Positions 8,293 through 42,459 of a stretch of 64,000 nt of DNA are shown in pieces. Origin of the DNA: Botryllus schlosseri (lineage: Eukaryota). Position 1 is the stretch's first letter; every line of letters starts with the position of its first letter. The DNA lies in assembly GCA_051294905.1 (NCBI GenBank), contig CM119372.1:8122001-8186000 (forward strand), given 5' to 3'. The notes beneath the pieces were generated by a model. The model saw only the letters and a list, made by a program, of their open reading frames with translations, was not told where the DNA came from and made no database searches. The translations under genes were made by a program, and so were the position numbers.

Positions 8293-11200
8293 ATGCACGC
8301 TGGTGATCGTAGACCCAAATCATGGGTCGAAAGTTCCGAAACACCTGCTCCAAGACACAATGCCGGAAGATTACTGAAGGACGATCGACGTCAGATTGCG
8401 TCACAATATTTTGACTCCGTTCCAAACCTGTCGTTTATGAACGATGTCGGGAGCGGAATACCGATACCCAGTATGTGGTATGACACCGTTGATGTGTCGG
8501 ACTTTGAGCATCGCATCGCTGCCCAATGCGACGATTGTCAATCTGAAGAATCTAAAAACTTATCCGAATTTCCCGAAGATGATATCGCTGTGACGTCAGT
8601 TCCGAGAGAATGCCGCACTGTATCCCCGATTCGTTTGGATGAAGAATCTAACGATTCTCATCTTTTAAACTGCTTCGACTCTTTCACGGAAGATTGGTCT
8701 GTCTACTCACGGAAATACACCGAATACGGAACTGGTGCGTTAGCGTACAAAGAAATTGAAAAGACCAAAGAGTATTTGAAGTCCCTTCCGACACACCAGT
8801 ATGAAGGAGAATTCCACGAAGAACCAAAACCGACCAATTCGACAGTTTCAGATTCAGATATTGGTGCGAGGGGAAGTTGGTCGTCCAGTACTGAAGACAT
8901 GAAAAATTTGCAATCTGACCCTCGATTAGACTATGTGTTGGACAGTACCTCTCAGGATGTAGTAGACAAGTCTAATCGTGAAAAAAGGAGTCAAAATCGA
9001 ACTGAGAATCTGTTCAGCCTGTACCAGCCACCGGCTCAAAATATGAGCGGTGTACCCCAATCTCTCGTAGGAGGGATTGGCGAAGATAACGAGTTTCCGA
9101 TTGAAAAGTGTCTAGTTCCTCCGCCACCCGAGGAGTACCACGGATTTCGTTTGTTGATCAAGTGCTTGAGTTTGGAGTTAGAGGTGGAAATGGAGCCAAT
9201 ATTTGCCAGCATCGCCCTGTACGACACCAAGCACAGGAAGAAGATTTCTGAGAATTTCTACTTCGATCTCAATTCAGACGAGATCAATAAAATGATTAAG
9301 TCCGACGTGCTGCACCCGTCGATACCGACGTTGGCGAGATCCGCCATATTTTCGTTGACCAACCCCACCAAAGACGTGTTTATCGTGATTATGTTGGAAA
9401 AAGTTTTGCAGCAAGGTGAGATACTCGCATGTGCCGAGCCGTATATGAAAGATGCTGCCGAAAAGACGAGGGAAAAATCAAAGCAGAACTGTAAATGGTT
9501 TTGCGAACGTTTGGGAAAGTACCGAATGCCATTCGCGTGGACCGCTATTCACTTGATGAACATTGTTGACAGCGCCACTAATTTGAAACCGCAGCAGGAA
9601 ACAACCTCTAGCGCTTTCGCTAATTCCACGGGGTCCGATGATAAGTTGTCCTCGTTGGACCCCAATTCTCAGAGGAGATCCCTAAAAAATTCGTTAACCA
9701 ATCAGCAGGATTTATCGGAAAGCGAACGTCAAATGCTAACAACTTTCAAGCCGGTGACGTTGACCGTGTCAAGTTTTTTCAAACATGAAAGCGATCGTCT
9801 CAAGGAAGATGACTTATTCAAATTTCTTCTCGACCTCAAACGACCGACCAACGTGGTCAAAAAGTTGCGCTGCATTCCCGCTAAACTGAGATTAGACGTG
9901 TCGCCGTGTCCTGCCAATTTCCCTTACTGCCTCACGCCCGATCTACACAGGCTAAAGCCTTATCCGGACCAGCGCGGCAGGCCCAGCAGGGAAATCAAAG
10001 AGTTTCCGCCCAAGGAAGTGTACACGCCGAATTTAACTTACTGCAATTTGATGTACGTCTACCCATTGAGCATCAACTTCACAAACAGACCAGGTCACGT
10101 ACGTAACATCGCCGTTAAAGTTCAGCTGCTGTGCGGTGAAGAGGCATCGAGCGTTATGCCGGTTATTTTCGGTAAGTCAAACTGCGCTGATTTCTCGAGT
10201 GAGGCCTACACCGCGGTAATATACCATAGCAAGTGCCCAGACTTTTACGACGAGATCAAGATTAAGCTTCCTGCGAAAATAACCGAGAAACACCATCTCT
10301 TGTTTACGTTTTATCACATCAGCTGTCAGAAGAAACAGGACCTCACGCCAATTGAAACAGTCGTGGGGCACACTTGGGTGCCGTTACTGCAGAACGGTCA
10401 CTTGCATGTTGGCGAGCTGGCACTGCCAGTGTCTATGGAGAAGCTGCCCGCTAATTACGCGATGCTATCACCAGAGTCAAATATGCCCGGCATGAAATGG
10501 GTCGACGGCAGAAAATTGGTCTTTGCTGTTTCTCTGAGATGCATCTCGACCGTACATACGCTGGACCGGCACTTGCAGAATTTCTTCACATTGTGCAATG
10601 CTGTGGATCGTGGCGCCGCAGGCAGGACAGAAGAGACAGAGCAAAGGCTGCGGGCCAGTATGCTAGCAGTCGCGAACGATGCTAAAATTGAGGCTGTCAT
10701 CGGTTTCCTGCATGTGATTCTGAACAAGTTTGTGCAGATACTAGTCAGGCCGCCGATTGTCAACGGGCATGTGATCAATTTGGGCACTGCCTGTTTCGAG
10801 GCTATCGCACAGCTGACCGTGAGACTGCATCAGTCGCTGGAATTTGACGTCGATGAGCATGGACGTAGCAATCTGCTCAACTCCTACGCGACGTATGTGT
10901 TTAATCCGAGCGCGTTGCCTGCAACTTGTGTGTCACAATCAGCTGATGACGGTAATGCCCGCGGCGGTGCTCATTACGCCACGATGACAAGACCGATTCA
11001 GAGGTCTCGTCCGTCTGTTTCAGCCGCAACGTTCAATTTGAGCAGCAGTAACCCAGACCTTACCAGCACGCCTCCAGCTTCTCCAGAAGAAAAAGATATG
11101 AAGTTCCTGATTGAAGACGACCCTGGTAAATTTTTGCGTTTTTCAAGCTCAAGAGCGTCACTGATGGAAACGCCGGCTGCTGGTAAAAGTGAAGGCACCA

Positions 11201-14200
11201 CGGTGAGGTCAATTACGAAAAAAGTCTTTCATGAAGAGCTGGCACTGCTTTGGGTCGTCTCCACCGGTTACGTGAGAGAACCTTCTTTCAAGCACGCGTG
11301 GTTTCTTTTCGACATGATGAAGAAATCGATGGCGCAACAGCTCGAGCAAAACGGCGGCAAAGAAATGGCAAGGTCGGCCCGATATCCGCCGCGTTTCGTG
11401 GACGACCTGACCAGACTCATTCACACCGTGACCACAGAGATTATCATGAGACACGGTAAGGATTACGATCTTGCCGAACGTTTAAACATCAGTCTCGCCT
11501 TCTTCTTCAACGACCTTCTCTCTCTCATGGACCGGGGATTTGTTTTCGGGTTGCTGCAGCATTACTGTCAGCATGTCGGGACTAAAATATTCTCTCTACA
11601 CAGTCCAGCTTCGTTGTTGAATCTGAGGCTTACACTAATGCGTATCGTGGCCAGCCACGAGCACTACGTTGCCTTGAATCTGCCGTTTAGCGACGGCCCT
11701 AGGCCGGCATCTCCCACCCCCAGTGTGACCTCTACAACCTCCTCCATCTTGTCCAGTGTTGCGAGTGGGGCCGCATCACAGTATGAACTATCGGACGCGT
11801 TCGTACAGCGGCATCTCTTAGCGGGTATCGTTCTCTCGGACATTCTCATGACTGTCGATTTAACTGAAAATGTCTCAGTCGATGGACCTCAGCTGTATGC
11901 CCTTACCACCCTTCGAAACCTGATGATAACCCACGATAAGGATCCGAGATTGGCGGGCGACTATGTCGCGAAAGAAAAGGTAGCGCAGCTCTATCTGCCG
12001 CTGGTGTTTATCGCCATTAAAGCGTTGCCGTACTTGAATCAGTTTGGTGCCGAAAATCCAGACGGCACTAACGAATCCGGGATGATCAGTCAAAGCGTAG
12101 CTAACGCTATCGCGAATGCGTCGCCTGCAGTTTTAGCGCGTGCCTCATCGTCTAACGCCGCATTAAACAGTGGGATGCTGACCGCTGAGTCTTCCAGAAA
12201 CATGCTACTGTGTTTGCTGTGGTTGATGAAGAATATATCTGCACAAGCAGCAAAGACACTGCTGTCGGGATTGTCCACGGTGCAGACGAATAACTTGTTG
12301 GATGTATTTTACTTGTCGGTGTCTTGTTTCGAGCATAAGGCGGTGAAGATGTCTCGGTTGACTAGGACGGATTCGAATAGGTCGTCAGTTTCGAGGAAGA
12401 AAGACAAGATGACTCGATTGGAAGATGCTATTCTCGGAGGCACCTCAGCCCGACTGGAGTTGTTAAAACGACGTCGTAATGAAAAAGGCAGTGTCGCGTC
12501 TGTGCCGCGTGATTTTGAGCGTGGCCTGCGTTGGCGTAAAGACCGTACCGAATGGAAACAAGATAAAGAGCATGGAGATAAGAGCAACGGAGATGACATG
12601 CTTGTGAACGGTAATTTTTCGGCGGAATCCACTCTGATTGTACTCGACACGATTGAGCGTATCATAGAAGCTTCTTCCGAACACGGTTCTGTGCCCGCGG
12701 TGCTGTCATCGTGTCTCAGAACGTTGCTCCACTGTTTAGGCACGCGACAGAGCATCGCAGTGTACACACACGCGTTCGCCACCCAGCGTTCGGTTGTCGC
12801 CAAGTTTCCGGAACTAGTTTTCGAAGAGGAGATCGAACAGTGTGCCGATTTGTGTTTGATACTTTTGCGAAGGTGTAGCAGTAACGCGCGCGCTGTCAGG
12901 ACACAGGCGTCTGCCTCGCTGTACCTGTTGATGAGACATAATTTCTCGGTGGGCAACTCGTTCGCAAGAGTCAAAATGCAGATTACAATGTCGTTGTCTT
13001 CGCTAGTCGGTATGACTGCGTCGGATAGCTTTGATGAGGAAAATCTACGTAGGTCACTAAAGACAGTTTTGATGTACGCGGAAAACGACGCCGATCTCAA
13101 ATCCACCAGTTTTCCAGAGCAGGTGCGGGACATGATCTTCAACTTTCACATGATACTATCCGACACGGTGAAGATGAAAGAGCACAAGGAAGACCCGGAG
13201 ATGCTAATCGATTTGATGTACCGGATCGCAAAAGGGTATCAGAACTCTCCGGACTTGAGGATGACATGGTTGCAGAACATGGCCAGGCAGCATTCAGAAC
13301 GGAAAAACCACGCGGAGGCCGGGATGTGTATCCTGCATAGTGCGGCGCTTGTAGCCGAGTATGTGAGTATGATCGAAGAAGCCCCTTATCTCCCGATCGG
13401 GTGTGTTGGATTTGAGCATGTCACCCCGAACATTTTGGAAGAAAGCGCAGTGTCTGAGGACGTGGTTTCACCACACGAAGATGGTGTTTGTACTGAAAAA
13501 TACTTCTCCACTAATGGTTTAGTTGGATTGCTCGAGCAGGCCGCTTATTCTTTCAACTTGGCTGGTCTCTACGAAGTCACAAACAGCGTCTATAAGTTGC
13601 TGGTGCCGGTGTATGAAAAATTTCATGAGCACAAGAAGATGTCTACCCTACACACGAAGCTCAAAGAGTGTTTCACGAAAATCAGCGGCCAAGTCGGGAA
13701 GAGAATGTTTGGGACTTATTTCCGGGTTGGATTTTACGGGCAGTTGTTCGGCGATCTTAATGCTGAAGAGTTTGTGTACAAGGAGCCCTCGATCACAAAA
13801 CTGCCGGAAATCTCTCACAGACTTGAGACTTTTTACGGACGGTGTTTCGGTGCCGACAACGTCGAGGTTTTAAAAGATTCGAAAGAAGTGGAGGTGTCGA
13901 AGCTAGACCCTGGAAAAGCTTACATTCAAATCACGTACGTAGACCCTTATTTTCACGAATGGGAAGATGCACGAAGAGTCACATACTTTGAAAGGAACTT
14001 CAACGTGGACAAGTTCTTATACGCGACGCCGTACACTCTCGAGGGCAAGGCGCACGGTACCATCAGCGAGCAGTACAAGAAGAAAGTCTACCTGCAGGTG
14101 TCGCAAACTTTCCCGTACCTGCGCACGAGGCTGAGCGTCGTGAGGAAGTGGGAGGAGGTGTTGAATCCGTTGGAGACGGCATGCGAGGACGTGGAACGGA

Positions 14201-15289
14201 AGACGAAGCAGCTGTTGCTCGCCGCTGAGCAGGAGGAGACTGACGTCAGAATGTTGCAGGTAATGATATTGTGTGGGTGTGTCTGATACGGGGCGATGAA
14301 AAAAATTGTCATGCAGCACCCTGCGTAACAGATTGTACAATTCTGGTTTTCTAATTGAAGCAAAATAATGGTTACGGTATCTAATTCTAATCTAGTTTTA
14401 GACATGTTTCTATGCTCTAATTTTGTTTCTAATTTTAATCGTTTTCCTGAAAAAGTTACGGGGAATCTGTACTGTAGCATGTGAAACGACCACAGATTGG
14501 CGTACCGACATTTCTCATTCTTATGAGCAAGTAGTTGAAAGAGTAGATTTAGTCGATGAGTCGCATGCTTTTAGCAATTAAGCGTGAAATATGAAATCAC
14601 ACGGGGAATCTTAGCAACTAACGCAAAATGAATAATGACACTAAGGTGAAATTTTCAAAAACAATTCCGTTGCCGTATGACGGTTTATCTGCCTATGTGG
14701 TATCACAATTTCGCTCATAAAGATGATGCATCCACACCCCAAAACTACCTTCGACAAAATCCACAGTGAATGAACCCAGTGTAATAGCAAGTAGCTTTAC
14801 CTAACAATCTGTAGTAGAATTGGAAGTAATCAAAAAACATGACCATTTGGGTGGGTAGTCCCGCAATTAGGCAAAACCTATTTGACTGCTCCTAAAATGT
14901 AGAGCCACATCTGCATAAACATATCATACAATGTTGCGGTTTTAATCCGAGTATTATTCCAGGTCAACCTTCAAGGATCGCTGCTGACCACCGTAAACCA
15001 AGGCCCGATGGAGGTGGCGCTCACCTTCCTGGCCACCATCCCCGAAGACGAAAGCCTGTGGATACCCTACAACAAGCTCCGGCTGGCTTTCCGTCGTTTC
15101 ATTTACGCCTGTTCGATCGCGCTCAAAAAGAACAAGCAACTCATAGGACCCGACCAGAAAGAATATCAGCGCGAGCTCGAGAGAAACTACAGCCGAATGA
15201 ACGAACAGTTGAGGCCGATGATCGATAGCTTGAAGGTAATGCATCTTCTGCGGGACGCGTTGTCCGATGACAACGCACAGCATCGTTGA
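8293..15289 (+). CDS. DOCK7: Dedicator of cytokinesis DOCK-C family GEF (DOCK6/7/8-like), ~2097 aa, 2 exons (8293-14259, 14963-15289)
   Basis: 1989 uninterrupted codons include the DOCK7-like N-terminus ([26 protein letters not shown]), the DHR1/C2 domain ([47 protein letters not shown]) and DHR2 ([15 protein letters not shown]). Phase-0 GT-AG intron 14260-14962 joins RMLQ to [18 protein letters not shown], matching DOCK7 KMLQMVLQGSV..TVNQGPLEV. The exact paralog name is uncertain. Confidence 0.95.
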
Positions 15290-25007: not shown

Positions 25008-25313
25008 CTACAAATTTTTTGACACGGATTTTTCTCCTTTGATTGCTTTCTCTTCATCAGCTAAGAAGTCGTCTTTGTCATAAATAACTTTCAACAATAA
25101 GGAACAACTAGGACAGGTGGCTTCTTCCTCACCAGCCTGCAGGGCTTCTAGCGAAATTTCAAATCTAAAAAGCGGCTCGAGACAGATACAATCAATGCTC
25201 AACAAAAGAAATGAAACCAACCGATCTCCGCATGGACAGGGATAGTAATACATCTCCTCATCCTCGTCGTATTCGAAGTCTTCAATCTCTACCTCATCGT
25301 GATAAATTGACAT
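25008..25313 (-). CDS. DPH3: Diphthamide biosynthesis protein 3 (CSL zinc finger), 82 aa, exons 25313-25222 and 25164-25008
   Basis: [31 protein letters not shown]|[29 protein letters not shown] is the canonical DPH3/KTI11 sequence; 57-nt GT-AG intron. Confidence 0.97.
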
Positions 25314-26905: not shown

Positions 26906-28425
26906 TTGATTAAATGAAAAGTTGCGCCGCTCATGACATGACACCAAGTCCACTCTGACACAGTACTGACATTCCATATTAGTATATTAGTATAACAGCC
27001 ATGATGTTCGATTTCAAGTATAGACTGGGATTTTTGCTTATTTTGAATGTGACTGACGGTTTAATATGTGAATAATAGCAACTGATCTTATCAAACATGT
27101 TCGCACCAAATCTCTTCGAAAATACCAGGTATGTAAGACAGTATTACATTTTTCTAGGAGAGCGTGTCTCAGTCATGTTGATTAGTTTCATCAAATGCGT
27201 TCTTTTAACCGAAATGCAACCCACATATTTGATAGAGATTGTCACCCTCTGTAGTAATCACCAACCCTATTGAAGATTTGGAATGCAGCAGACACAAGGT
27301 ATCACATTAGCAATGAGACACTAGTTATCAAATCGAGTTGTGGGATCAAATGGGTCAATAGTTGCCTTCATATCCACCATGCATACGAGTTGCCTTGCTT
27401 ATAAGAATACTATTGATAGTTTCTTCAATTTGACATATCGTCACACATTACACTTTGTTTGGCTTATTCAAGTGGCCCACTGAAGAAAAATGTCACCCGC
27501 CCCTGAGCCCAGGATCATTCAGTATTGTATAATTGTAGCTTGTTATTGGCAAACAAGTTACGCATAATGTTGCCACCAAATCGAGTTTGCTTCGAGGGTA
27601 AATTGACCAGGAGCATGTACCGATTCGGGGTTTCTAATGTGTAAATCATGACCACTGGTTGTCAAAACATCTTTGTGACCCAGCTCAGATCAGAGCCACC
27701 ACATATACATTTTCGCGATTGCAGTCTTTCACAGCCCAAGACTACACCGAATCACATGATGATATGAGACTAGTCAGTTTCAATACTCAGAAGCGCAATG
27801 TCTCCTGTGTAGTCGCACGTCACCATCGAACCTGGCGTATATCAAGTATACTTGAAATATCAATGTATAGCTACCTCAAAATCAACACATGGGCCATAAT
27901 TACTGATCTACATGAAGTTATATCCACCAAACCATACACTACAAAACAAAATGTACCTCTAAGGCTCTTTCTTTCAGTTGGATGATGAGAGAATCACGTC
28001 TTCAGACTTTTCTTCTTGCAATAAAATGGGATCTTCAAATTAGATAATCTACTATAGTCTTTCCTAAAGTTCGACGACTCGAAAGAACTAAACCTCTTGG
28101 AACCTGACAGAAAAGATCGCACACCATGAAAGAATGTAATGATACCATACGGAAAAATAACAAATGTCATTCAAAATCAACACTGACATCAAATGAGGAC
28201 TGGATGGAGATTGTTTCTTGCGTTTGGTTTTTTTCATTTAGCTTCAAAGGCAATTAAATGGGTCAGCAGTACATTGCACATGTGTATATGCAGAAGCAGG
28301 TAAGTCGCGATAAAATTAACATCAATTCAGTGTCCAACAATGGTTTTCAAATCTCCAGTTAAGTGTTAAGCAATTTCAAGTTTCTTCTAGAATCATTCGT
28401 CAGTTTTCAGTTATCAACACGCCGA

Positions 28426-28632
28426 TCATTGTATCGTAGTACAGCTTTTAGCCTGCATACCCTTTCTTCCCATCTCGGTGACTATCTGCACACGTGTTCC
28501 AGGGCTCAAGCTCTCGGCATCGGTGCAAGCGGATACGTGAACAAAAACATCCTGTCCACCGTCTGAAGGAGTGACGAATCCGTATCCTTTTTCGTGGTTG
28601 AAAAACTTGATTTCTCCTTCCATCGAACCCAT
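28426..28632 (-). CDS. Stand-alone cold-shock protein (bacterial CspA-like), 68 aa, intronless
   Basis: [35 protein letters not shown]...[14 protein letters not shown]: RNP1 (KGYGFV) and RNP2 (VFVH), no additional domain. ATG in an A-rich context after a pyrimidine-rich AG acceptor. Confidence 0.92.
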
Positions 28633-28749
28633 TTTGAATTTGAAGACTGCTAACCGGGAACAAAAGTGCACGCGAATGACTACTACCAAGGCAACGGCAA
28701 ATTTTCAAGAGAGCGAGGTGTTGGCCGCAGGGAATGGTATGTGAATATG

Positions 28750-28779
28750 CTGATTGCTGATTGGGCGCACAAGCACGTG
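28750..28779 (-). promoter_or_regulatory. Putative promoter elements of the first Csp gene (CCAAT/Y-box-like CTGATTGG and E-box CACGTG)
   Basis: CTGATTG-CTGATTGG at 28750-28764 and CACGTG at 28774-28779, 120-150 nt upstream of the ATG. These are short motifs that could be chance. Confidence 0.3.
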
Positions 28780-28996
28780 GGTTCGGTTCTATGTGTCATA
28801 GTAGCACACTATTCGCAGTGATCAGCTCTCCTAGGTTATTCGAGTCGATAAAATATAGCTTGTCGCGTCATTTACCATCGACGCACAGTCGCTAGTTTGG
28901 TTTAACCTTTTCCACTTGTCAGTGCCTGTTTATATAACCACATTATTTAGTTACAAACACGTGTAGCGTCTTTACCTCTGAATCAAAAGCGCACAA

Positions 28997-29450
28997 GTAC
29001 AACACACGCGCGTCCACGTCGTCCAAATATCATATGATCGACCGAAAAGATCATCACTCTATCAAATATGCCGGACCTGATGTGTGGAACAGTATCCCGC
29101 CGGCCATCCGACAGTCGACGAGCATGTCCACATTCAAGTCGAAATACAAGCAATTACTACTAAATAAATACAGTCCATCCTCAGGATTACCGGACCACGA
29201 CTGACCTATCGATCTCGCTTCCCATGACATGCCGCCCTATTTCTTGTCGCTTTCTTTTTCTATACTATCTTCTTTACTTTCATTCAGTGTGCATGCCGCC
29301 TCTTTACATCGCCTAGGCCAAGGTGGGTGTCTGATTCCATAGACAACTCCTAGTCGCTTCGACATCTTCCTTTCTCTTCATTGTATCGCATTTTTTGTAG
29401 TGTATTGAACTGATAAAATTGCTAATAAACCAATGATGATGATGATGATG
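28997..29450 (+). mobile_element. L2-type LINE 3' end with (GAT)n tail
   Basis: ORF2 tail ..SIKYAGPDVWNSIPPAIRQSTSMSTFKSKYKQLLLNKY, 3' UTR, then AATAAACCAATGATGATGATGATG. Confidence 0.88.
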
Positions 29451-30744
29451 AGGTATCCTTCCACTCTACCAGTCCGATTGAATAGTATATTCATATTGAA
29501 ATGAACCCGAATATTTTCGGCTGACACTCGTCAGGGGTAATCGTCAGCAACTAGTAGAGAATTAGAAATAATATTGTATATCAACAATCGTATCACAAAA
29601 TATGACGTCACCAGCATGGAATGAAATCTCAAATAAGAGAGCGTCTCAAATGTATTGTTTTAAGATGGTACACGAACTTCTGTAGACAAAGCTACCAGTC
29701 AGGTGTAAAATTCAATCAGTTTTATTGGTGTTAATATTTGGAATAAGCTACCACCAAATCTTCTGAGCTAAGAAATGGCTTCATTATCTGATCTCTAACT
29801 ACCACTACATGTCAAAATGTTTATCAAATCCACCACAAGATTGCGATGTAATGAAAAGATTGGAGGGTGACAGGAAGACTTGGAGCAGTCTTTTAATCAG
29901 ATACCCACCTTGGCCTACAGCATGTAAATTAGGGTTGCCATATTTTCGTTTCACAAATTCCGGACGCTCTTCAGCGACCATTAGCGAATTTCAAAAGGAG
30001 GTGTTAGCACATTGTCGATCAATATGACGTCACACCAGCAACGCTTTGTTTATCGAATAGAGGTGGTCCCGATCCGGTTCAGGAGTATGTGGTTGTGTAT
30101 TGTAAGTTGTAACCAGGGCCGAAGTCGGATGTTTTCAGCCCCTCCCGCCCAAATAAACACTGATCTCGGACCTCCCGTAGGGTATTCGATGCAACTTCTG
30201 GGGGCTTACTATATGCATCATTGAATAAAGCATTCAGACGGCCTGCCCTAAACCGACTCTATGAATAGGCCATTATCTTGTAATTGCGATTACAATCAGA
30301 CTTCTTTTTGTAAATTAATGTTATTTTATATTTCTTTTTATTCGCCGTTTTTGCGAGGGTGGTAGTCCCCATATTGAAACCAATATGTATTATGCTAAAT
30401 CGCTCACAGCGCGAAGAAAAATTTCATGTAGCATAAATCTTCCCAAAGATAATCTTGTTTACGTTGATTTACGAAAAAATTATTATCTTACTTCAAGCAT
30501 TCAAAATTCCGGACATTTAGGCATATTTTAGAAATTCCTCCCGGACGCAGTTTTTACAGTGAAATTCCGGACGTATGAATGTAAATAAAAGGCATGCACT
30601 GCACAGTGGATTTAAGAACGGATAACATAAAAGGAATCGACAAATATGAATGCCGCATGCGTCGGTAGGCGCGGTTGATAAGTCAGACTATGGTCAGGTA
30701 ATCTTGAGGGCTGATTAGTATTATTTTTTTTCAATCAATAATCG

Positions 30745-31050
30745 TCAGATTATATTTTCATCTGATCAAGACACATGCACAGTTGCACACAATGTAGCCT
30801 ACAATGCGATAAGACCAATGCGTTGCAATGAACAGATAGGAGGATCCATCCCGACCTAGTGCCCGATGTCTAGTTCTCTATGTTAATCCTCCATTCCGCG
30901 ACTCATTCTTGCTCGATTTCCATTCCTTGTGAGTACGTTCTTTAATCTGGTCGTCTTCTGGGCTTTTTTTTCGCCGTAAGAACAGCGACGCGAGGGAAGA
31001 GGAGCCCAGATAACCTCCAACGCGGAATCGAACCTGGGCCGCCTGGGTAG
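30745..31050 (-). mobile_element. tRNA-derived SINE with an L2-like 3' tail; 5' end cut by the pogo-like insertion
   Basis: B-box GGTTCGATTCC on the minus strand at ~31022-31035; the 3' portion is homologous to the L2 3' UTR. Confidence 0.65.
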
Positions 31051-31052
31051 TA

Positions 31053-32427
31053 GGGGAGACCGGGGACAAATGTAACTAGGGGCAAATGTAACAATCGACC
31101 TCACCGCTAGTAGGATGGAGAAATCAGCTTGATATTTTAAGTGCGGATGCAGTAGTTATTTCTCCTATTATACCTGGAGTTACGTTGAGCTACGATCCGA
31201 AACCCCGGAATAATTTGCAAAAAACGAAATTTTTGACCCTTGAGTAAAGTTTTTCTGGTCTGGAATAATTTGTCTAGACGAATAGTACCTCAACTAGTTA
31301 CAACATAATATGTATAGCTGGAACAATGTTACTATAGTCTACCGTGGTGATAGAAGGAATAGGACTTGCATCGCCGGGAAGGTGCCATACTGAGACACTA
31401 ATCATGGTCGAGCGTGTCAGGGGCAATCGTAACACTCTGTTACTTTTGCCCCGTTACAATATGTTATCAATTCTGATGTCTTTGTTCATATGTTGGTATT
31501 ACCATTCATCTACTGCAAAATAATCTTGCAACAGCCAGAAGCTCACCAAAACAGATACTGCCTTGCGATACCAATTCTAACATGATCATCTGTCGAAACG
31601 GCCATACAATGGTGGTGATGTGAATCTGACGGCTCGGTTATTTTCGTGATTCAACCACCCTTTCTCATGTTGATTGACTTTTGGTGTGTCGAACTTCAAT
31701 ATTCATGGCTTGATTCTCGTCCTCTGACTTTGATCATGGACCACTTACATTTTGATATTTGATGTGAACAGTTTATGTTAATTTTCTACAGCACAGAAGA
31801 ATGTCATTATAGCTTTGACGCCACACAATGCTGCGTCCTCATTTTACAATACTATCATCGGCCCATTCAACCAAGATATGTTAGCCAGGTCGGTTTCGCA
31901 CCTTCGCAGGTGACCGAGTGACCAACCCCTTATGCACGCTGAACAACAGAACCTTGGCAGAAGAGGCCGAATATGTGTAGGGAGATGATGGAATGAATGT
32001 GTCTCTTGTACACTTTAAGCTTGAACAAGACACGAAGGGTGATATTACATGCAGATGTCATAAATGGGGTGGGGCGTAGCCTGGAAGCGTTCAAACGTCT
32101 CTTTCTTTAGTTTCATGCAATATTACAATTTGTGCTTCCGTTTTCGTTGTTCATTTCGTTTGAGTTTAGTTATAAATAACACTGTTACAATTGCCCCGCA
32201 AGGGTGGTACAATTGCCCCTGGGTACGGGGCGATTGTAACATTTGAGCAGCGATTTTTGCGACCCAAAATTTACATGATTGATTGTTGATTGAGTTCCAA
32301 TTTATTTTTTATATCAACTATCGAGTTGTTGGCTTCTTTATATAAAACTTTGGAAGTGAAATTTCCACGAGAAAACCACGTAATGATGGAAAATACGAAA
32401 AGTGTTACAATTGTCCCCGGTCTCCCC
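31053..32427 (+). mobile_element. Decayed Tc1/mariner (pogo-like) DNA transposon, 1375 bp
   Basis: TIR GGGGAGACCGGGGACAA.TGTAAC at both ends with TA TSDs (31051-52, 32428-29); broken DDE_1-like remnants RPLTLIMDH and IIALTPHNA...IIGPFN at ~31700-31875. Confidence 0.8.
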
Positions 32428-32844
32428 TAGTATTAACTGTGATAAATGCTCGATCATCTCCTGGGTGGCTCGGCTTAAAAGGCTTTGTCATATCGAGCCT
32501 CCCGTCGACCTTACATGTCACATTTCACTGTGTTGCATTTTTATTGTGTGTGATGTTGATTTGTAATGTGGACGAATAAAAAACGCCCTCTCTCTCTCTC
32601 TCTCTCCATAGGGAGTACTAGTAAATATATATTTCCATCAGTCATTCTATTCTCTTCCGTCCAGCTAATAAATAACAATTTTATCAGAACCGTCTTGGGC
32701 TGATTGTAAAAGCAAGTGCTATACTTACTCGTACCTCGAGCCTGGGTTCTTCTGATATTCTTTAAATCCTTAATCCAATCGAAGTTACAATATGACATCC
32801 TCTGTTGGGGGGCTGTTAGTAGGCTATAACTGCACTTGAGCCAT

Positions 32845-33475
32845 TGCAAAAACTACAACATAACGTACAGCGTATCATGGCCTGGTTGTCCATATCCAAC
32901 AAAGTCGCTGGTGAAGAGATTCGGTGTCCCAAACAGAGAAGATATGCGGAAGCTAGAAGTCGCCAAGTTTAGTTCCACTGCGGTCATTGCCCCGAATAGG
33001 TACAGCACACGCGCGTCCACGTCGTCCAAATATCATACGATCGACCGAAAAGATCAACGCTCTGTCAAATATGCCAAACCTAAAGTATGGAACAGAAGTA
33101 TCCTTCAGGCCATCCGACAGTCGACGAGCATGTCCAATGTCCACATTCAAGTAGAAATACAAGCAATTTCTGCTAAATAAATACTAATCCGCCTTCAATA
33201 TTATACCTGACCACGGCATGACCTATCGATCTCGCCTCCCGTGAAATGCCACCCCATTTTTTGTCACTTACATTTTATTATACTATCTTCTTTCACTTTT
33301 CATTCAGTGCGCATACCTCGTCTTTTCATCGCCTGGGAGGCCAAGGTGTGTGTCTGATTCCCAAGACTATATATACTCGAAGTCGTTTCGACACCTTGAG
33401 CACTATCTTTTCATTGTAGCCTATCGCATTTTTGTGGTGTATTGAACTGATGAAAATTGCAAATAAACCGAACTG
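32845..33475 (+). mobile_element. L2-type LINE 3' fragment
   Basis: RKLEVAKF...YSTRAST..SVKYAKPKVWN..IRQSTSM remnant plus the shared 3' UTR. Confidence 0.85.
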
Positions 33476-39897: not shown

Positions 39898-40918
39898 GTC
39901 ATACTATTCTCACCATACAATATCAGCCATCGACTGTAAAGTTCATGTGTTGAGTGTTTACATACGCCAGAATCAGGGAACTTGATATTTTTAGATATCC
40001 CTGGCCAGAATGCATTCGGATTACGTAATCACACAACATGGTGGTCACACTGGCGTAGGTCCCAGGAGTTATCCAATGAGTCGTGTGAAGTTGCAGCTAA
40101 TGAATGTTTCGACCCAGTTGCAAACATACCAGTTAGCAATCGGTAATATGGCATAAATTATGCGTGGAACTGAGCCACTGCGTACAATGGCACCATTCAA
40201 TTTTCAACAACCACCGATTCCGGACGCGTATTCGTAATGTTATAGCTCCTACAGTATTCACCGCCGCGCACTTTCAGATTCGGTTTTTACGTTTATTGAC
40301 TTTGGTTGCGCAGTTTGCACTGTCGTCACATATTGAACGTGTAACTCTGAGCTGTGTCAACGACTTCCGGACATGTTTCGAGCCAAGGATTTCGACCATC
40401 CTCACCTCGCATTGCGCCGTATGATAATTAAGCTAATGGCCATGCATAATCGAGTCCCAAAGCGTGTCAGTATTCCAGGGGTAATTGAACTATACCAGCC
40501 CTACCGATGAGGACACCTACAGTCGTAGATTTCCACTCATTGACCTTACAAAACCGTCGTTCCGACCCTAGACCGAGCAAACTACTATCATATTCTGATT
40601 CTGCCATAAGTGATGAGCGTCAAACCAATTTGCTGCATGTCAGATGTCGTTTTTAATTCAACAGGTCGATTCACTTGTTGCGTGGATGGAAAGAAATGAT
40701 ACTGTAACACACAAAAATTGGAAAATACACACAAAAGGTAAATGTATTGCAAATTCACTCATGTAACTGGATATACCACGAGGTGGAAACCTCGCCAGTT
40801 ATTCCAGACACCCGAAGTAAAAAGACAATGGCAGATAACAAAAGTCGAAAACGAAATCTGCGGTACGGGTACCGTACTATCACAAGAATGTGCATTTCCC
40901 GTGACAACGTACGGGCTA

Positions 40919-41137
40919 TCAATGTGGTTGGGGATCCGGAATGCAAACTTTTGCTTGCAAGCCCTTCTGTCCTTTTTCGGGAACTACTGATACCATTTGT
41001 CCTTCTACCAGAGTTTTGAATCCACTACCAGCGATGGCCGAGTGGTGAACAAATATGTCAGGTCCACTTTCAGGGGTGATAAATCCATAACCCTTATCTT
41101 CGTTGAAGAATTTCACGGTTCCACGAACTTCAGTCAT
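40919..41137 (-). CDS. Stand-alone cold-shock protein (bacterial CspA-like), 72 aa, intronless
   Basis: [64 protein letters not shown]...: full Csp pattern, no other domain. The ORF-track start at 41194 is GTG; the ATG at 41137 is preferred. Confidence 0.94.
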
Positions 41138-42459
41138 TCTTTTTTTAAAACTTTGACCGTACGGAGACTTAAACGAGGAGAAGAGACCGCTCACGAATAC
41201 GATTACTTTTCAGTGTGGCGAAATACGAGACAGAGAACGCATGTTCACTAATTTACGACCTCCTGTGGGCATGGCGAGTCGCTGAGCCATGATTCATCAA
41301 ATTTATCACCATGAATTTTATAACATCCACCACTCCATATTTATTAGTTGCTATCCGAAGGAGAAGAATTAAATATAGGTTATGGAATATTATTGGACTT
41401 TATAACAAGTTTCAGCATTTAATTATGATGTCGCATAGCATTGGGCTGTAGTCAATAGGACTTTCTAGCAAATGTCCAGTTACAAAAGCTTATAATATTT
41501 GTTTAGGTCCAATGCAATTTTCATGAAATAATTTGCAGTCATACAAATGAAATATGGTAAAACTATAATACGACAATCTTCTCACAAAATCCGGTAAGAC
41601 TATAATAATTAACAAAAGAAGAAAGCGAAATGTATTTCTTGTTCTGTTTGGCGCAGCTAGTGGGAGAATTGGCATTTATTGGCCATTTGTTTTTGAAAAT
41701 CAACTATAACGAATTTGGTCCGTATTCTTATTCGCTCCAAATGTCCGCATTCGGATCACGGTCTGTCAGTTGAGTAGCACTGTGCGTAGATTGTCGGATT
41801 CCCAATTTTCGGAATCCTTAATCAATTCTCAATCCGGCACCGGTCCGAAAAAATACTGGTGGTAAATTTCCAACTCATAGTCCGAAATAATGCTGCTAAA
41901 ATCAAATAATTTGTTCATGTTTCACTGAGAAAATCCAGTTAAAATCCGACTTACAAAGCAAATTAAAAATCCGGACCCAGTCCGGCTACATTAAAAATCG
42001 ACGAAATCCGCCACCCACTCATGTTCTTCCGGCGAACTGGTCCCGTCCTTCCCTGACCTTGTTCTATAATTAATATCGCATTTCATGTGTGTGATTTTCG
42101 CCAATATATTTATCGCTTAATTCAATCTTGCTCCCGCCACCGTAAATGGCGGGTATTGATCCGTTTATATTCGTTTATATTCGAGGTGACCTAAGTCGCG
42201 AATGTATTTATTTTCAATTTCATGTTTCCTTTCCCATGATACATGGATGAATAAAATACTTGAAACCCAAAAGTGGCTCAGGGTACCATAGACTGCAACG
42301 CTCTGAGACTTTTCCAACAATTTAAACTGTAGGAAAATATGTCTGTGAATAATGTCAAAACACAGCAAGTGTTGTTTGAGCTGACCTGTTCTTTCGAAAC
42401 AGTAAAGTTCTCGACAAACGGTCAAGTATCATGGTAAAGTTTATTCATAAAATTTTATC

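What the first reader, a model, noticed from the sequence alone, without database searches (positions are those of the whole stretch)
28426..28780. Bacterial-type stand-alone cold-shock protein gene no. 1 embedded in animal DNA
Seen: a 68-aa intronless CSD-only ORF surrounded by animal L2 and hAT repeats. Known: animal CSD proteins (YBX, LIN28, CSDE1, CARHSP) are longer or multidomain, and the YBX CSD has a KKNNPRKYL-type insertion absent here; ~70-aa Csps are typical of bacteria. The pattern KFFN..KGYGF..P..GG.DVFVH.SA recalls alphaproteobacterial Csps. It appears domesticated: no Shine-Dalgarno, a pyrimidine-AG acceptor just before the ATG, and CCAAT/E-box motifs upstream. I recall that horizontally acquired Csp genes were reported for the ascidian Styela clava, so novelty depends on the species.
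Basis: partly seen in the sequence, partly recalled or inferred. Interest (0 to 1): 0.72.

Follow-up and report, generated by a model that had tools for sequence, protein, structure and literature searches.

The report
Sea-squirt bacterial-type cold-shock gene, divergent copy
A sea-squirt chromosome carries a real, very highly expressed, intron-free gene for a 68-residue bacterial-style cold-shock (RNA-binding) protein, but this gene family was already reported in the sea squirt Styela clava in 2020, and my trees cannot prove that it came from bacteria.

Summary
Window 28426-28632 (minus strand) is a 68-codon ORF that is one cold-shock domain and nothing else (Pfam CSD, E 1e-17). The model has pLDDT 93 and TM 0.88-0.90 to E. 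coli CspA/CspC.

RNA reads show one unspliced, polyadenylated mRNA of about 590 nt. It runs from a template-switch-marked 5' end at 28711 to a poly(A) site at 28122, at roughly 1,000 RPKM. There is no intron and no spliced leader, so the proposed acceptor before the ATG is not used.

The gene lies in a tunicate chromosome-scale contig. It sits between a DPH3-like gene, a DOCK gene and a 483-bp host repeat with thousands of copies.

It is the most divergent of three paralogues (Csp2 is 12.5 kb away, Csp3 on another chromosome). With a fourth sequence from a related species they form a clade (support 99/94 and 99/99) inside an unresolved mass of bacterial Csps. Best database hits are bacterial. 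AU tests do not reject a common origin with the animal's own CSD genes, and no donor can be named.

Two other agents of this scan already reported the paralogues (Csp2, Csp3) in this genome. The family is published for Styela clava (PMC7540406). Verdict: real, a new member of a known kind, moderate interest.

The parts
28426..28632 (-). Csp1 coding sequence: 68 codons plus stop (28426-28428), a single cold-shock domain
   Evidence: Translation. Pfam PF00313 at E 1e-17. E. coli CspA is the best solved relative, 55.7 bits. AF2 model pLDDT 93, five strands. TM 0.88-0.90 to CspC/CspA.
28633..28711 (-). 5' UTR, 79 nt, with no upstream ATG; the main cDNA 5' end is at 28711
   Evidence: 413 reads in bulk RNA run X23 continue at 28711 into the reverse complement of a template-switch oligo. 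A contig of run X7 reaches 28738, so a minor start slightly upstream is possible.
28122..28425 (-). 3' UTR, 304 nt, ending at a poly(A) site
   Evidence: Loose poly(T) on the + strand just before 28122 in X23 (116 reads) and X21 (550 reads), with no genomic A-run there. There is a fixed T>G at 28360 and a 36-bp tandem-duplication allele at 28215-28250 in X21. A contig of X7 runs on to 27957, possibly a longer 3' end.
28712..28790 (-). Proximal promoter region: CCAAT box (28760-28764), E-box CACGTG (28774-28779), A/T-rich CATATTCA at about -30
   Evidence: Read directly from the sequence relative to the mapped 5' end. Function of the motifs is inferred, not tested.
40922..41137 (-). Paralogue Csp2 (71 aa, 48% identical), same strand, 12.5 kb away; the subject of another finding
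   Evidence: tblastn within the window. Own-genome search. Same clade in both trees.

Best explanation
Window 28122-28711 (minus strand) is a functional, single-exon nuclear gene of a styelid-type sea squirt. It encodes a 68-residue protein that is a single bacterial-type cold-shock domain. It is the most divergent of three paralogues that go back to one ancestral gene. That ancestor was most likely taken up from a bacterium by an ancestor of these ascidians. It was then fitted with a eukaryotic promoter and poly(A) signal, duplicated in tandem (Csp1/Csp2), and later copied to another chromosome (Csp3).

Shown: the gene, its transcript ends, its very high expression, its host context, its fold, and its place in the tunicate Csp clade.

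Inferred: the protein works like bacterial CspA-family proteins. These are small OB-fold proteins that bind single-stranded RNA or DNA through the RNP1 (KGYGFV) and RNP2 (VFVHV) strands and keep RNA unfolded for translation, especially in the cold.

Csp1 has a beta3-beta4 loop two residues shorter than its relatives. It lacks two of the usual base-stacking aromatic residues (CspA F34 is V, Y42 is A). Its RNA preference or affinity probably differs from Csp2/Csp3.
For: **Gene and domain**
- establish the ORF, the domain and the fold.

**Transcript**
- Depth is about 1,000-1,100 per mate orientation in 6% of bulk run X23. My arithmetic gives about 7,700 of 12.9 M reads, or about 1,000 RPKM.
- Depth reaches 17,900 in single-cell run X21, strand-consistent with a minus-strand mRNA.
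- The 5' end at 28711 is template-switch-marked and the poly(A) site is at 28122. No splice joints were reported.

**Host context**
- The window is at 8.12 Mb of contig C2 of a 495.5-Mb, 219-contig assembly.
- A DOCK-C/D gene lies at 8293-14286, and a CSL-zinc-finger (DPH3-like) ORF at 25011-25313.
- A 483-bp repeat with more than 5,600 candidate copies at 97-99% identity starts 258 bp upstream.
- GH6 domains, the tunicate cellulose-synthase hallmark, are present in the genome.
- DNA and unlabelled runs of three studies (P1-P3) hold 75-94% of the words of the 1.4-kb stretch that spans the gene and its flanks.

**Family**
- Csp1, Csp2, Csp3 and P0152 form a clade at 99/94 and 99/99.
- P0152 comes from a contig that also carries a repeat dispersed in this genome, so it is from a related animal.
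- The family is under purifying selection: dN/dS 0.18 for Csp2-Csp3 and 0.10 for Csp2-P0152.

**Bacterial affinity**
- All named hits among the top 120 of a 5.8-billion-protein search are bacterial.
- Csp1 scores 70.9 bits to its best bacterial hit, against 48.9 to the tunicate CSD-Gly-rich genes and 37 to YBX.
- Csp2 is 75% identical to a prokaryotic Csp that sits on a compact five-gene contig.
- Among solved structures, CspA scores 55.7 bits against 31 for CARHSP1 and 29 for YBX1.

**Published precedent**
Against: **Origin**
- The trees place the tunicate clade in an unresolved polytomy.
- AU tests do not reject holding it together with the tunicate CSD-Gly-rich genes (p 0.39 and 0.47), with YBX (p 0.36), or with all eukaryotic CSDs (p 0.29).
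- The stand-alone Csps and the animal's CSD-Gly-rich genes share the unusual KFFN..KGYGF start. W is found at that position in 116 of 117 top bacterial hits.
- No donor lineage is identified.
- Distribution outside styelids could not be checked in eukaryote genomes with these tools.

**Csp1 itself**
- It is on a long branch (0.68-1.12 changes per column) and has lost two aromatic contact residues. Relaxed constraint cannot be excluded.
- dS against its paralogues is saturated, so selection on Csp1 alone is unmeasured.
- Binding, chaperone activity and cold induction of this gene were not tested.
Confidence: 0.72

Rival explanations
1. Endogenous origin. The stand-alone Csps arose within tunicates from the animal's own intronless CSD-plus-Gly/Tyr/Arg-rich genes (or a shared eukaryotic ancestor) by loss of the tail. 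On this reading the likeness to bacterial Csps reflects the general closeness of short CSDs.
For: - AU tests do not reject a Csp + CSD-Gly-rich clade (p 0.39; p 0.47 at a cost of only 1.5 lnL).
- Both groups share KFFN..KGYGF.
- Both are intronless in this genome.
Against: - Csp2 is 75% identical to a prokaryotic Csp but only 50% to the Gly-rich genes.
- Csp1 scores 70.9 bits to bacteria against 48.9 bits to the Gly-rich genes.
- The Gly-rich genes carry the eukaryote-type FVHQ[ST]KIKMEGHRTL stretch, whereas Csp2/3 have the bacterial FVHHSAI.GSGFKTL.
- KFFN also occurs in Marinobacter Csps.
- There is no third-codon signal of gene conversion.
- The free trees put the Gly-rich clade outside bacteria + Csps (85/84 to 92/83).
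Confidence: 0.15
2. Csp1 is a decaying or functionless duplicate. It is still transcribed from a strong promoter, but its protein is no longer under selection as an RNA chaperone.
For: - It has the longest branch in the clade.
- It has a two-residue loop deletion and has lost two aromatic contact residues.
- It is only 48-54% identical to its paralogues.
Against: - The frame is intact, with RNP1, RNP2 and all the glycines of the fold conserved.
- The model is confident, pLDDT 93.
- Expression is about 1,000 RPKM, with a clean start context and no upstream ATG.
- No well-supported coding difference appeared in three RNA data sets, while the 3' UTR shows a SNP and an indel allele. This last point is weak, because the local flanks are also nearly invariant.
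Confidence: 0.08
3. Artefact: bacterial contamination, a chimeric assembly join, or an exon of a larger spliced gene.
For: None was found. The only starting point is the bacterial look of the protein.
Against: - The gene lies on a chromosome-scale contig, with host genes and a host repeat within 0.3-3 kb.
- Runs of three studies (P1-P3) hold most of the 1.4-kb stretch spanning gene and flanks.
- The mRNA is polyadenylated and has a template-switch-marked 5' end.
- There are no splice joints, and depth drops to zero on both sides.
- CDS GC is 47.8%, like the host DOCK exon at 48.9%.
Confidence: 0.02

Closest known systems
Horizontally transferred Csp genes of Styela clava (Wei et al. 2020, PMC7540406)
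   Same: Small stand-alone CSD genes in an ascidian nuclear genome, three copies, with best hits bacterial. In S. clava they were reported to be induced at 12 and 2 degrees C.
   Different: - There, all three genes lie on one contig and two were annotated with introns. Here two lie in tandem on C2 and one on C9, and Csp1 is demonstrably unspliced.
- This assembly (495.5 Mb) does not fit S. clava (340 Mb). It fits the 496-Mb haplotype assembly of Botryllus schlosseri. That is an inference only.
- Orthology of Csp1 to any S. clava gene could not be tested, because no sequences were available to the tools.
- My ML and AU analysis shows the transfer is less firmly proven than a neighbour-joining tree suggests.
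Bacterial CspA-family cold-shock proteins (E. coli CspA/CspC/CspE, B. subtilis CspB)
   Same: Length, single CSD, RNP1 and RNP2 motifs, and a five-stranded barrel. Csp1 is 42-46% identical to them, with TM 0.85-0.90.
   Different: - Csp1 is encoded in an animal chromosome with a eukaryotic promoter and a poly(A) tail.
- CspA W11 is F in Csp1, F34 is V and Y42 is A.
- The beta3-beta4 loop is two residues shorter.
- A C-terminal QAK.C motif is shared only with the tunicate paralogues.
Animal CSD proteins (YBX, LIN28, CSDE1, CARHSP1) and the CSD-Gly-rich type
   Same: The same domain fold. All are present in this genome, nine CSD loci in total.
   Different: Those proteins are longer or multidomain. 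They carry FVHQ-type RNP2 and, for YBX, the NNPRKYLRSV loop. Their CSDs are split by introns, except in the Gly-rich genes. Bit scores to Csp1 are 37-49, against 71 for bacterial Csps.

Membership tests
CspA-family cold-shock proteins (Pfam PF00313, single-domain type) | One CSD of about 65-70 residues with no other domain | tested here: met
   68 aa; CSD covers residues 4-65 at E 1e-17; no further family apart from an overlapping weak OB_RNB match.
CspA-family cold-shock proteins (Pfam PF00313, single-domain type) | RNP1 (K-G-[FY]-G-F-[IV]) and RNP2 (V-F-V-H) nucleic-acid-binding motifs | tested here: met
   KGYGFV at 15-20 and VFVHV at 29-33. Both align with invariant columns of 25 relatives.
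CspA-family cold-shock proteins (Pfam PF00313, single-domain type) | Five-stranded antiparallel beta-barrel (OB fold) | tested here: met
   AF2 model pLDDT 93 with five strands. Foldseek TM 0.88-0.90 and rmsd 1.3-2.0 to CspA/CspC. This is a prediction, made with an alignment of bacterial Csps.
CspA-family cold-shock proteins (Pfam PF00313, single-domain type) | Full surface patch of aromatic residues (CspA W11, F12, F18, F20, F31, H33, F34, Y42) | tested here: inconclusive
   From the alignment to CspA: F, F, Y, F, F and H are kept or conservatively replaced. F34 is V, and Y42 is A next to a two-residue deletion.
CspA-family cold-shock proteins (Pfam PF00313, single-domain type) | Binds single-stranded RNA/DNA, melts RNA structure, and is induced by cold | not testable with these tools
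   No binding assay or temperature series was available. Only constitutive high expression was seen.
Tunicate (Styela-type) horizontally acquired Csp genes | Stand-alone Csp gene integrated in an ascidian chromosome and expressed | tested here: met
Tunicate (Styela-type) horizontally acquired Csp genes | Shares one origin with the other tunicate Csp genes | tested here: met
   Clade of Csp1, Csp2, Csp3 and P0152 at 99/94 and 99/99. Shared QAK.C end, KFF and N-terminal length.
Tunicate (Styela-type) horizontally acquired Csp genes | Phylogeny places the genes with bacteria to the exclusion of eukaryotic CSDs | tested here: inconclusive
   The free trees do so with weak support (85/84 to 92/83). 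AU tests do not reject the alternatives (p 0.29-0.47).
Tunicate (Styela-type) horizontally acquired Csp genes | Orthology to one of the three published S. clava genes | not testable with these tools
   No supplement is held for PMC7540406. No S. clava protein appeared in the searches.
Animal Y-box (YBX) proteins | CSD with the NNPRKYLRSV loop and FVHQ, followed by a long charged tail | tested here: not met
   The own-genome YBX exon has them and Csp1 does not. The score is 37 bits only.

The most novel reading that the evidence does not exclude
The stand-alone Csps and the two intronless CSD-plus-Gly/Tyr/Arg-rich genes of this animal go back to a single acquired bacterial Csp. A transferred prokaryotic domain would then have been duplicated and also rebuilt into eukaryote-style RGG/YG-tailed RNA-binding proteins. 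Csp1 would be a neofunctionalised copy with a reduced aromatic RNA-binding patch. If the genome is a botryllid, the acquisition would also predate the Styela-Botryllus split, and would not be a Styela clava adaptation.
Probability: 0.15. Interest if true: 0.6.

Novelty: new member of a known kind. Interest (0 to 1): 0.38.

Why it matters
Bacteria-to-animal gene transfers that end up as highly expressed, working genes are few, and tunicates supply some of the best cases (cellulose synthase).

This gene adds three things:
- a precisely mapped, unspliced, poly(A)+ transcript;
- a divergent paralogue whose RNA-binding surface has changed;
- probably a second styelid lineage that carries the family.

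It also shows that the published transfer claim rests on a domain too short to give a decisive tree. Synteny and taxon sampling, not phylogeny alone, must settle it.

The family itself is already in the literature, and two paralogues were already reported by this scan.

Tried and rejected
**Searches that gave little**
- The word-indexed search with Csp1 alone gave one candidate only, a bacterial Csp at 47% identity.
- The exhaustive HMMER search was dominated by multi-CSD proteins whose summed scores hide single-domain relatives. I used some of these as FVHQ-type (apparently protist) representatives; their origin is not named by any tool.
- The ESM Atlas returned only bacterial and phage Csp clusters.
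- The JGI metagenome scan found nothing above 55% identity, so no orthologue of Csp1.
- Exact look-ups show that none of this genome's Csp proteins is in the public protein collection.
- No supplement with the S. clava sequences is held.
- Rfam found nothing in 20-45 kb of the window.

**Hypotheses tested and not supported**
- Marinobacter-type Csps as donor. They share KFFN and the N-terminal length, but the tree shows no sister relation. The AU test neither rejects nor supports it (p 0.34).
- Gene conversion between the Csps and the CSD-Gly-rich genes. Third-codon identity is 5/10-5/11, so there is no signal.
- Flank homology between Csp1 and Csp2. There is none, whereas Csp2 and Csp3 share 623 bp at 80.6%, including upstream DNA.
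- GC content as a sign of foreign origin. It is uninformative: the CDS is 47.8% and host coding is 48.9%.
- Polymorphism as a test of constraint. There is no power, because the unique flanks are as invariant as the gene.
- L2 and hAT labels. No transposase or reverse-transcriptase domain was found in 16 flanking ORFs.

**Not used**

Full report
**1. What is there**

On the minus strand, an ATG at 28632 opens a 68-codon frame that stops at 28428-28426.
- Pfam's cold-shock domain covers residues 4-65 at E 1e-17, 64 bits against a cut-off of 27. Nothing else matches.
- The window has no N.
- Among solved structures the best relatives are E. coli CspA (55.7 bits), CspE and CspC. The first animal proteins come much lower: CARHSP1 at 31 bits and YBX1 at 29 bits.
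- An AlphaFold model built on 26 aligned sequences has mean pLDDT 93 and five strands. It superposes on CspC/CspA at TM 0.88-0.90.

**2. It is a working eukaryotic gene, not an exon and not a contaminant**

I laid four RNA data sets on 27000-32900.
- *Depth.* It is continuous from 28122 to 28711 and close to zero on both sides.
- *5' end.* In the bulk run X23, 413 reads continue at 28711 into the reverse complement of a template-switch oligo. That marks the 5' end of the cDNA.
- *3' end.* In X23 and the single-cell run X21, 116 and 550 reads continue before 28122 into poly(T). This is a poly(A) tail on a minus-strand RNA, at a place with no genomic A-run.
- *Strand.* The bias of X21 fits a minus-strand mRNA.
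- *Splicing.* No intron-like joint was reported, and no spliced-leader loose end was among those shown.

The mRNA is thus about 590 nt. It has a 79-nt 5' UTR without upstream ATG, a start context of CAAAATGG, and a 304-nt 3' UTR. The 'acceptor' before the ATG is simply read through.

From the depths, about 7,700 of 12.9 million reads of X23 fall on the gene. That is roughly 1,000 reads per kb per million (my arithmetic). X21 reaches a depth of 17,900.

A contig of X7 extends to 28738 and to 27957, so minor alternative ends may exist.

**3. Host context**

- The window lies at 8.12 Mb of contig C2 in a 495.5-Mb assembly of 219 contigs.
- A 1,997-aa DOCK-C/D exon lies at 8293-14286.
- A CSL-zinc-finger (DPH3-like) ORF lies at 25011-25313.
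- A 483-bp repeat at 28969-29451 has more than 5,600 first-look candidates. The 40 scored full-length copies are 97-99% identical and lie on 14 of the large contigs.
- The 1.1 kb downstream of the gene is single-copy.
- GH6 domains, the hallmark of tunicate cellulose synthase, occur twice on C9 and in none of 14 control bacteria.
- DNA and unlabelled runs of three studies (P1-P3) hold 75-94% of the words of the 1.4 kb spanning gene and flanks.

Contamination or a chimeric join is excluded as far as such data can.

The assembly size and 16 large contigs fit the 496-Mb haplotype-1 assembly of Botryllus schlosseri (PMC12448946). They do not fit S. clava (340 Mb) or S. plicata (419 Mb). This is an inference; the tools hide the name.

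**4. The family in this genome**

The genome has nine CSD loci:
- Csp1;
- Csp2, 12.5 kb away on the same strand (48% identical);
- Csp3 on C9 (86% identical to Csp2);
- two intronless CSD-plus-Gly/Tyr/Arg-rich genes on C9;
- YBX, LIN28, CSDE1 and a CARHSP1-like gene.

Nine is also the CSD count published for S. clava, against four or five for Ciona, Molgula and the older botryllid annotations (PMC8122590).

Csp2 and Csp3 share 623 bp at 80.6%, including upstream DNA. Csp1 shares no flank with either.

dN/dS is 0.18 for Csp2-Csp3 and 0.10 for Csp2-P0152. Against Csp1, synonymous sites are saturated.

P0152 is a 72-aa protein on a 1-kb Logan contig. That contig also carries a repeat dispersed in this genome and no tRNA. 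It therefore comes from a related animal.

**5. Origin**

*Similarity.* A profile of the three paralogues, searched against 5.8 billion proteins, gave P0152 first. After that came only Csps of bacterial or metagenomic source. Every name given was bacterial.

| Query | Best bacterial hit | Own CSD-Gly-rich genes | Own YBX |
|---|---|---|---|
| Csp1 | 70.9 bits, 49% | 48.9 bits | 37 bits |
| Csp2 | 94 bits, 75% | 63 bits | 35 bits |

The protein that Csp2 matches at 75% sits on a compact five-gene contig.

Named genomes with the nearest Csps are marine Gammaproteobacteria such as Marinobacter and Pseudomonas.

*Trees.* Two ML trees (LG+C20, 69 columns) recover Csp1 + Csp2 + Csp3 + P0152 at 99/94 and 99/99, with Csp1 on a long branch. 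The clade sits in an unresolved polytomy of bacterial Csps. The CSD-Gly-rich genes and the FVHQ-type (apparently protist) CSDs fall outside.

*Tests.* The AU test does not reject:
- Csps + Gly-rich genes (p 0.39 and 0.47);
- Csps + YBX (p 0.36);
- all eukaryotic CSDs together (p 0.29);
- Csps + Marinobacter (p 0.34).

The domain is too short for a decisive tree.

*A further complication.* The Csps and the Gly-rich genes share KFFN..KGYGF, where 116 of 117 top bacterial hits have W. Marinobacter Csps have KFFN too. Third-codon positions show no gene conversion.

I conclude that transfer from a bacterium is the best explanation, at roughly 0.7. It rests on similarity, architecture and restricted distribution. 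No donor can be named.

**6. How it probably works**

RNP1 (KGYGFV), RNP2 (VFVHV) and the structural glycines are intact. The protein should bind single-stranded RNA or DNA as bacterial Csps do, and act as an RNA chaperone. In S. clava the family is induced at 12 and 2 degrees C.

Three things are specific to Csp1:
- a two-residue deletion in the beta3-beta4 loop;
- V in place of CspA F34;
- A in place of CspA Y42.

These changes reduce the aromatic stacking patch. This suggests changed specificity or affinity rather than loss of function, given the intact frame and the expression level. That is inference.

**7. Novelty**

The family was published for S. clava in 2020 (PMC7540406). Two follow-up agents of this scan reported Csp2 and Csp3 of this genome.

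New here are:
- the mapped transcript of Csp1;
- its divergence;
- the likely presence of the family in a second styelid lineage;
- the demonstration that the phylogenetic case for transfer is weaker than stated.

Neither the B. schlosseri genome paper nor the S. plicata paper mentions cold-shock genes (zero occurrences).

Noticed in passing
window 28969-29451: A 483-bp dispersed repeat 258 bp upstream of the Csp1 5' end. It has more than 5,600 first-look candidates, and the 40 scored full-length copies are 97-99% identical on 14 of the large contigs, so it is a very young, very abundant element. It is transcribed on both strands. It contains a short ORF ending in a LINE-tail-like ...WNSIP...IR... 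motif (recognised from memory, not tested).
   Followed up: partly
window 28215-28250 and 28360: The 3' UTR is polymorphic. A 36-bp tandem duplication (with one extra A) appears in 8,892 reads of single-cell run X21 but not in X23 or X7. T>G at 28360 appears in every read of three RNA data sets, so the assembly carries the rarer allele or an error.
   Followed up: no
window 25011-25313 (-): A 101-aa ORF with a CSL zinc finger (PF05207, E 1.9e-19), i.e. a DPH3/KTI11-like gene. It lies 2.8 kb downstream of Csp1 on the same strand.
   Followed up: no
L007:1477-1944 and L012 (G000:C9 27.05 and 27.09 Mb): Two intronless genes for a CSD followed by a Gly/Tyr/Arg-rich tail (156 and 161 aa), with an orthologue in another run (P0272, 74%). 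They share KFFN..KGYGF with the stand-alone Csps. Their best non-tunicate hits are also bacterial (54%, 71 bits), and no named eukaryotic relative turned up. Their origin is open.
   Followed up: partly
L002 (G000:C9:11080590-11080787) versus window 40000-42100: The Csp3 and Csp2 loci share 623 bp at 80.6%, including about 300 bp upstream of the CDS. Csp3 therefore arose by DNA-level duplication together with its promoter, not by retroposition of an mRNA alone.
   Followed up: partly
L026-L036 (Marinobacter genomes): Marinobacter Csps have F instead of the near-universal W in KWFN, and the same N-terminal length as the tunicate Csps. The tree gives no sister relation, so this may be convergence.
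   Followed up: yes
L025 (JGI contig Ga0568873_0232627): The prokaryotic Csp closest to Csp2 (75% identity) lies among five small, tightly packed, co-oriented genes with overlapping stops and starts. That arrangement is phage-like. The ESM Atlas also listed a largely viral Csp cluster among the nearest. A phage as vector was not examined.
   Followed up: no
window 8293-14286 (+): A single 1,997-aa open exon encodes a DOCK-C/D guanine-nucleotide exchange factor (DOCK_C-D_N, C2, and DHR-2 lobes A and B). It is already the subject of another note of this scan.
   Followed up: no
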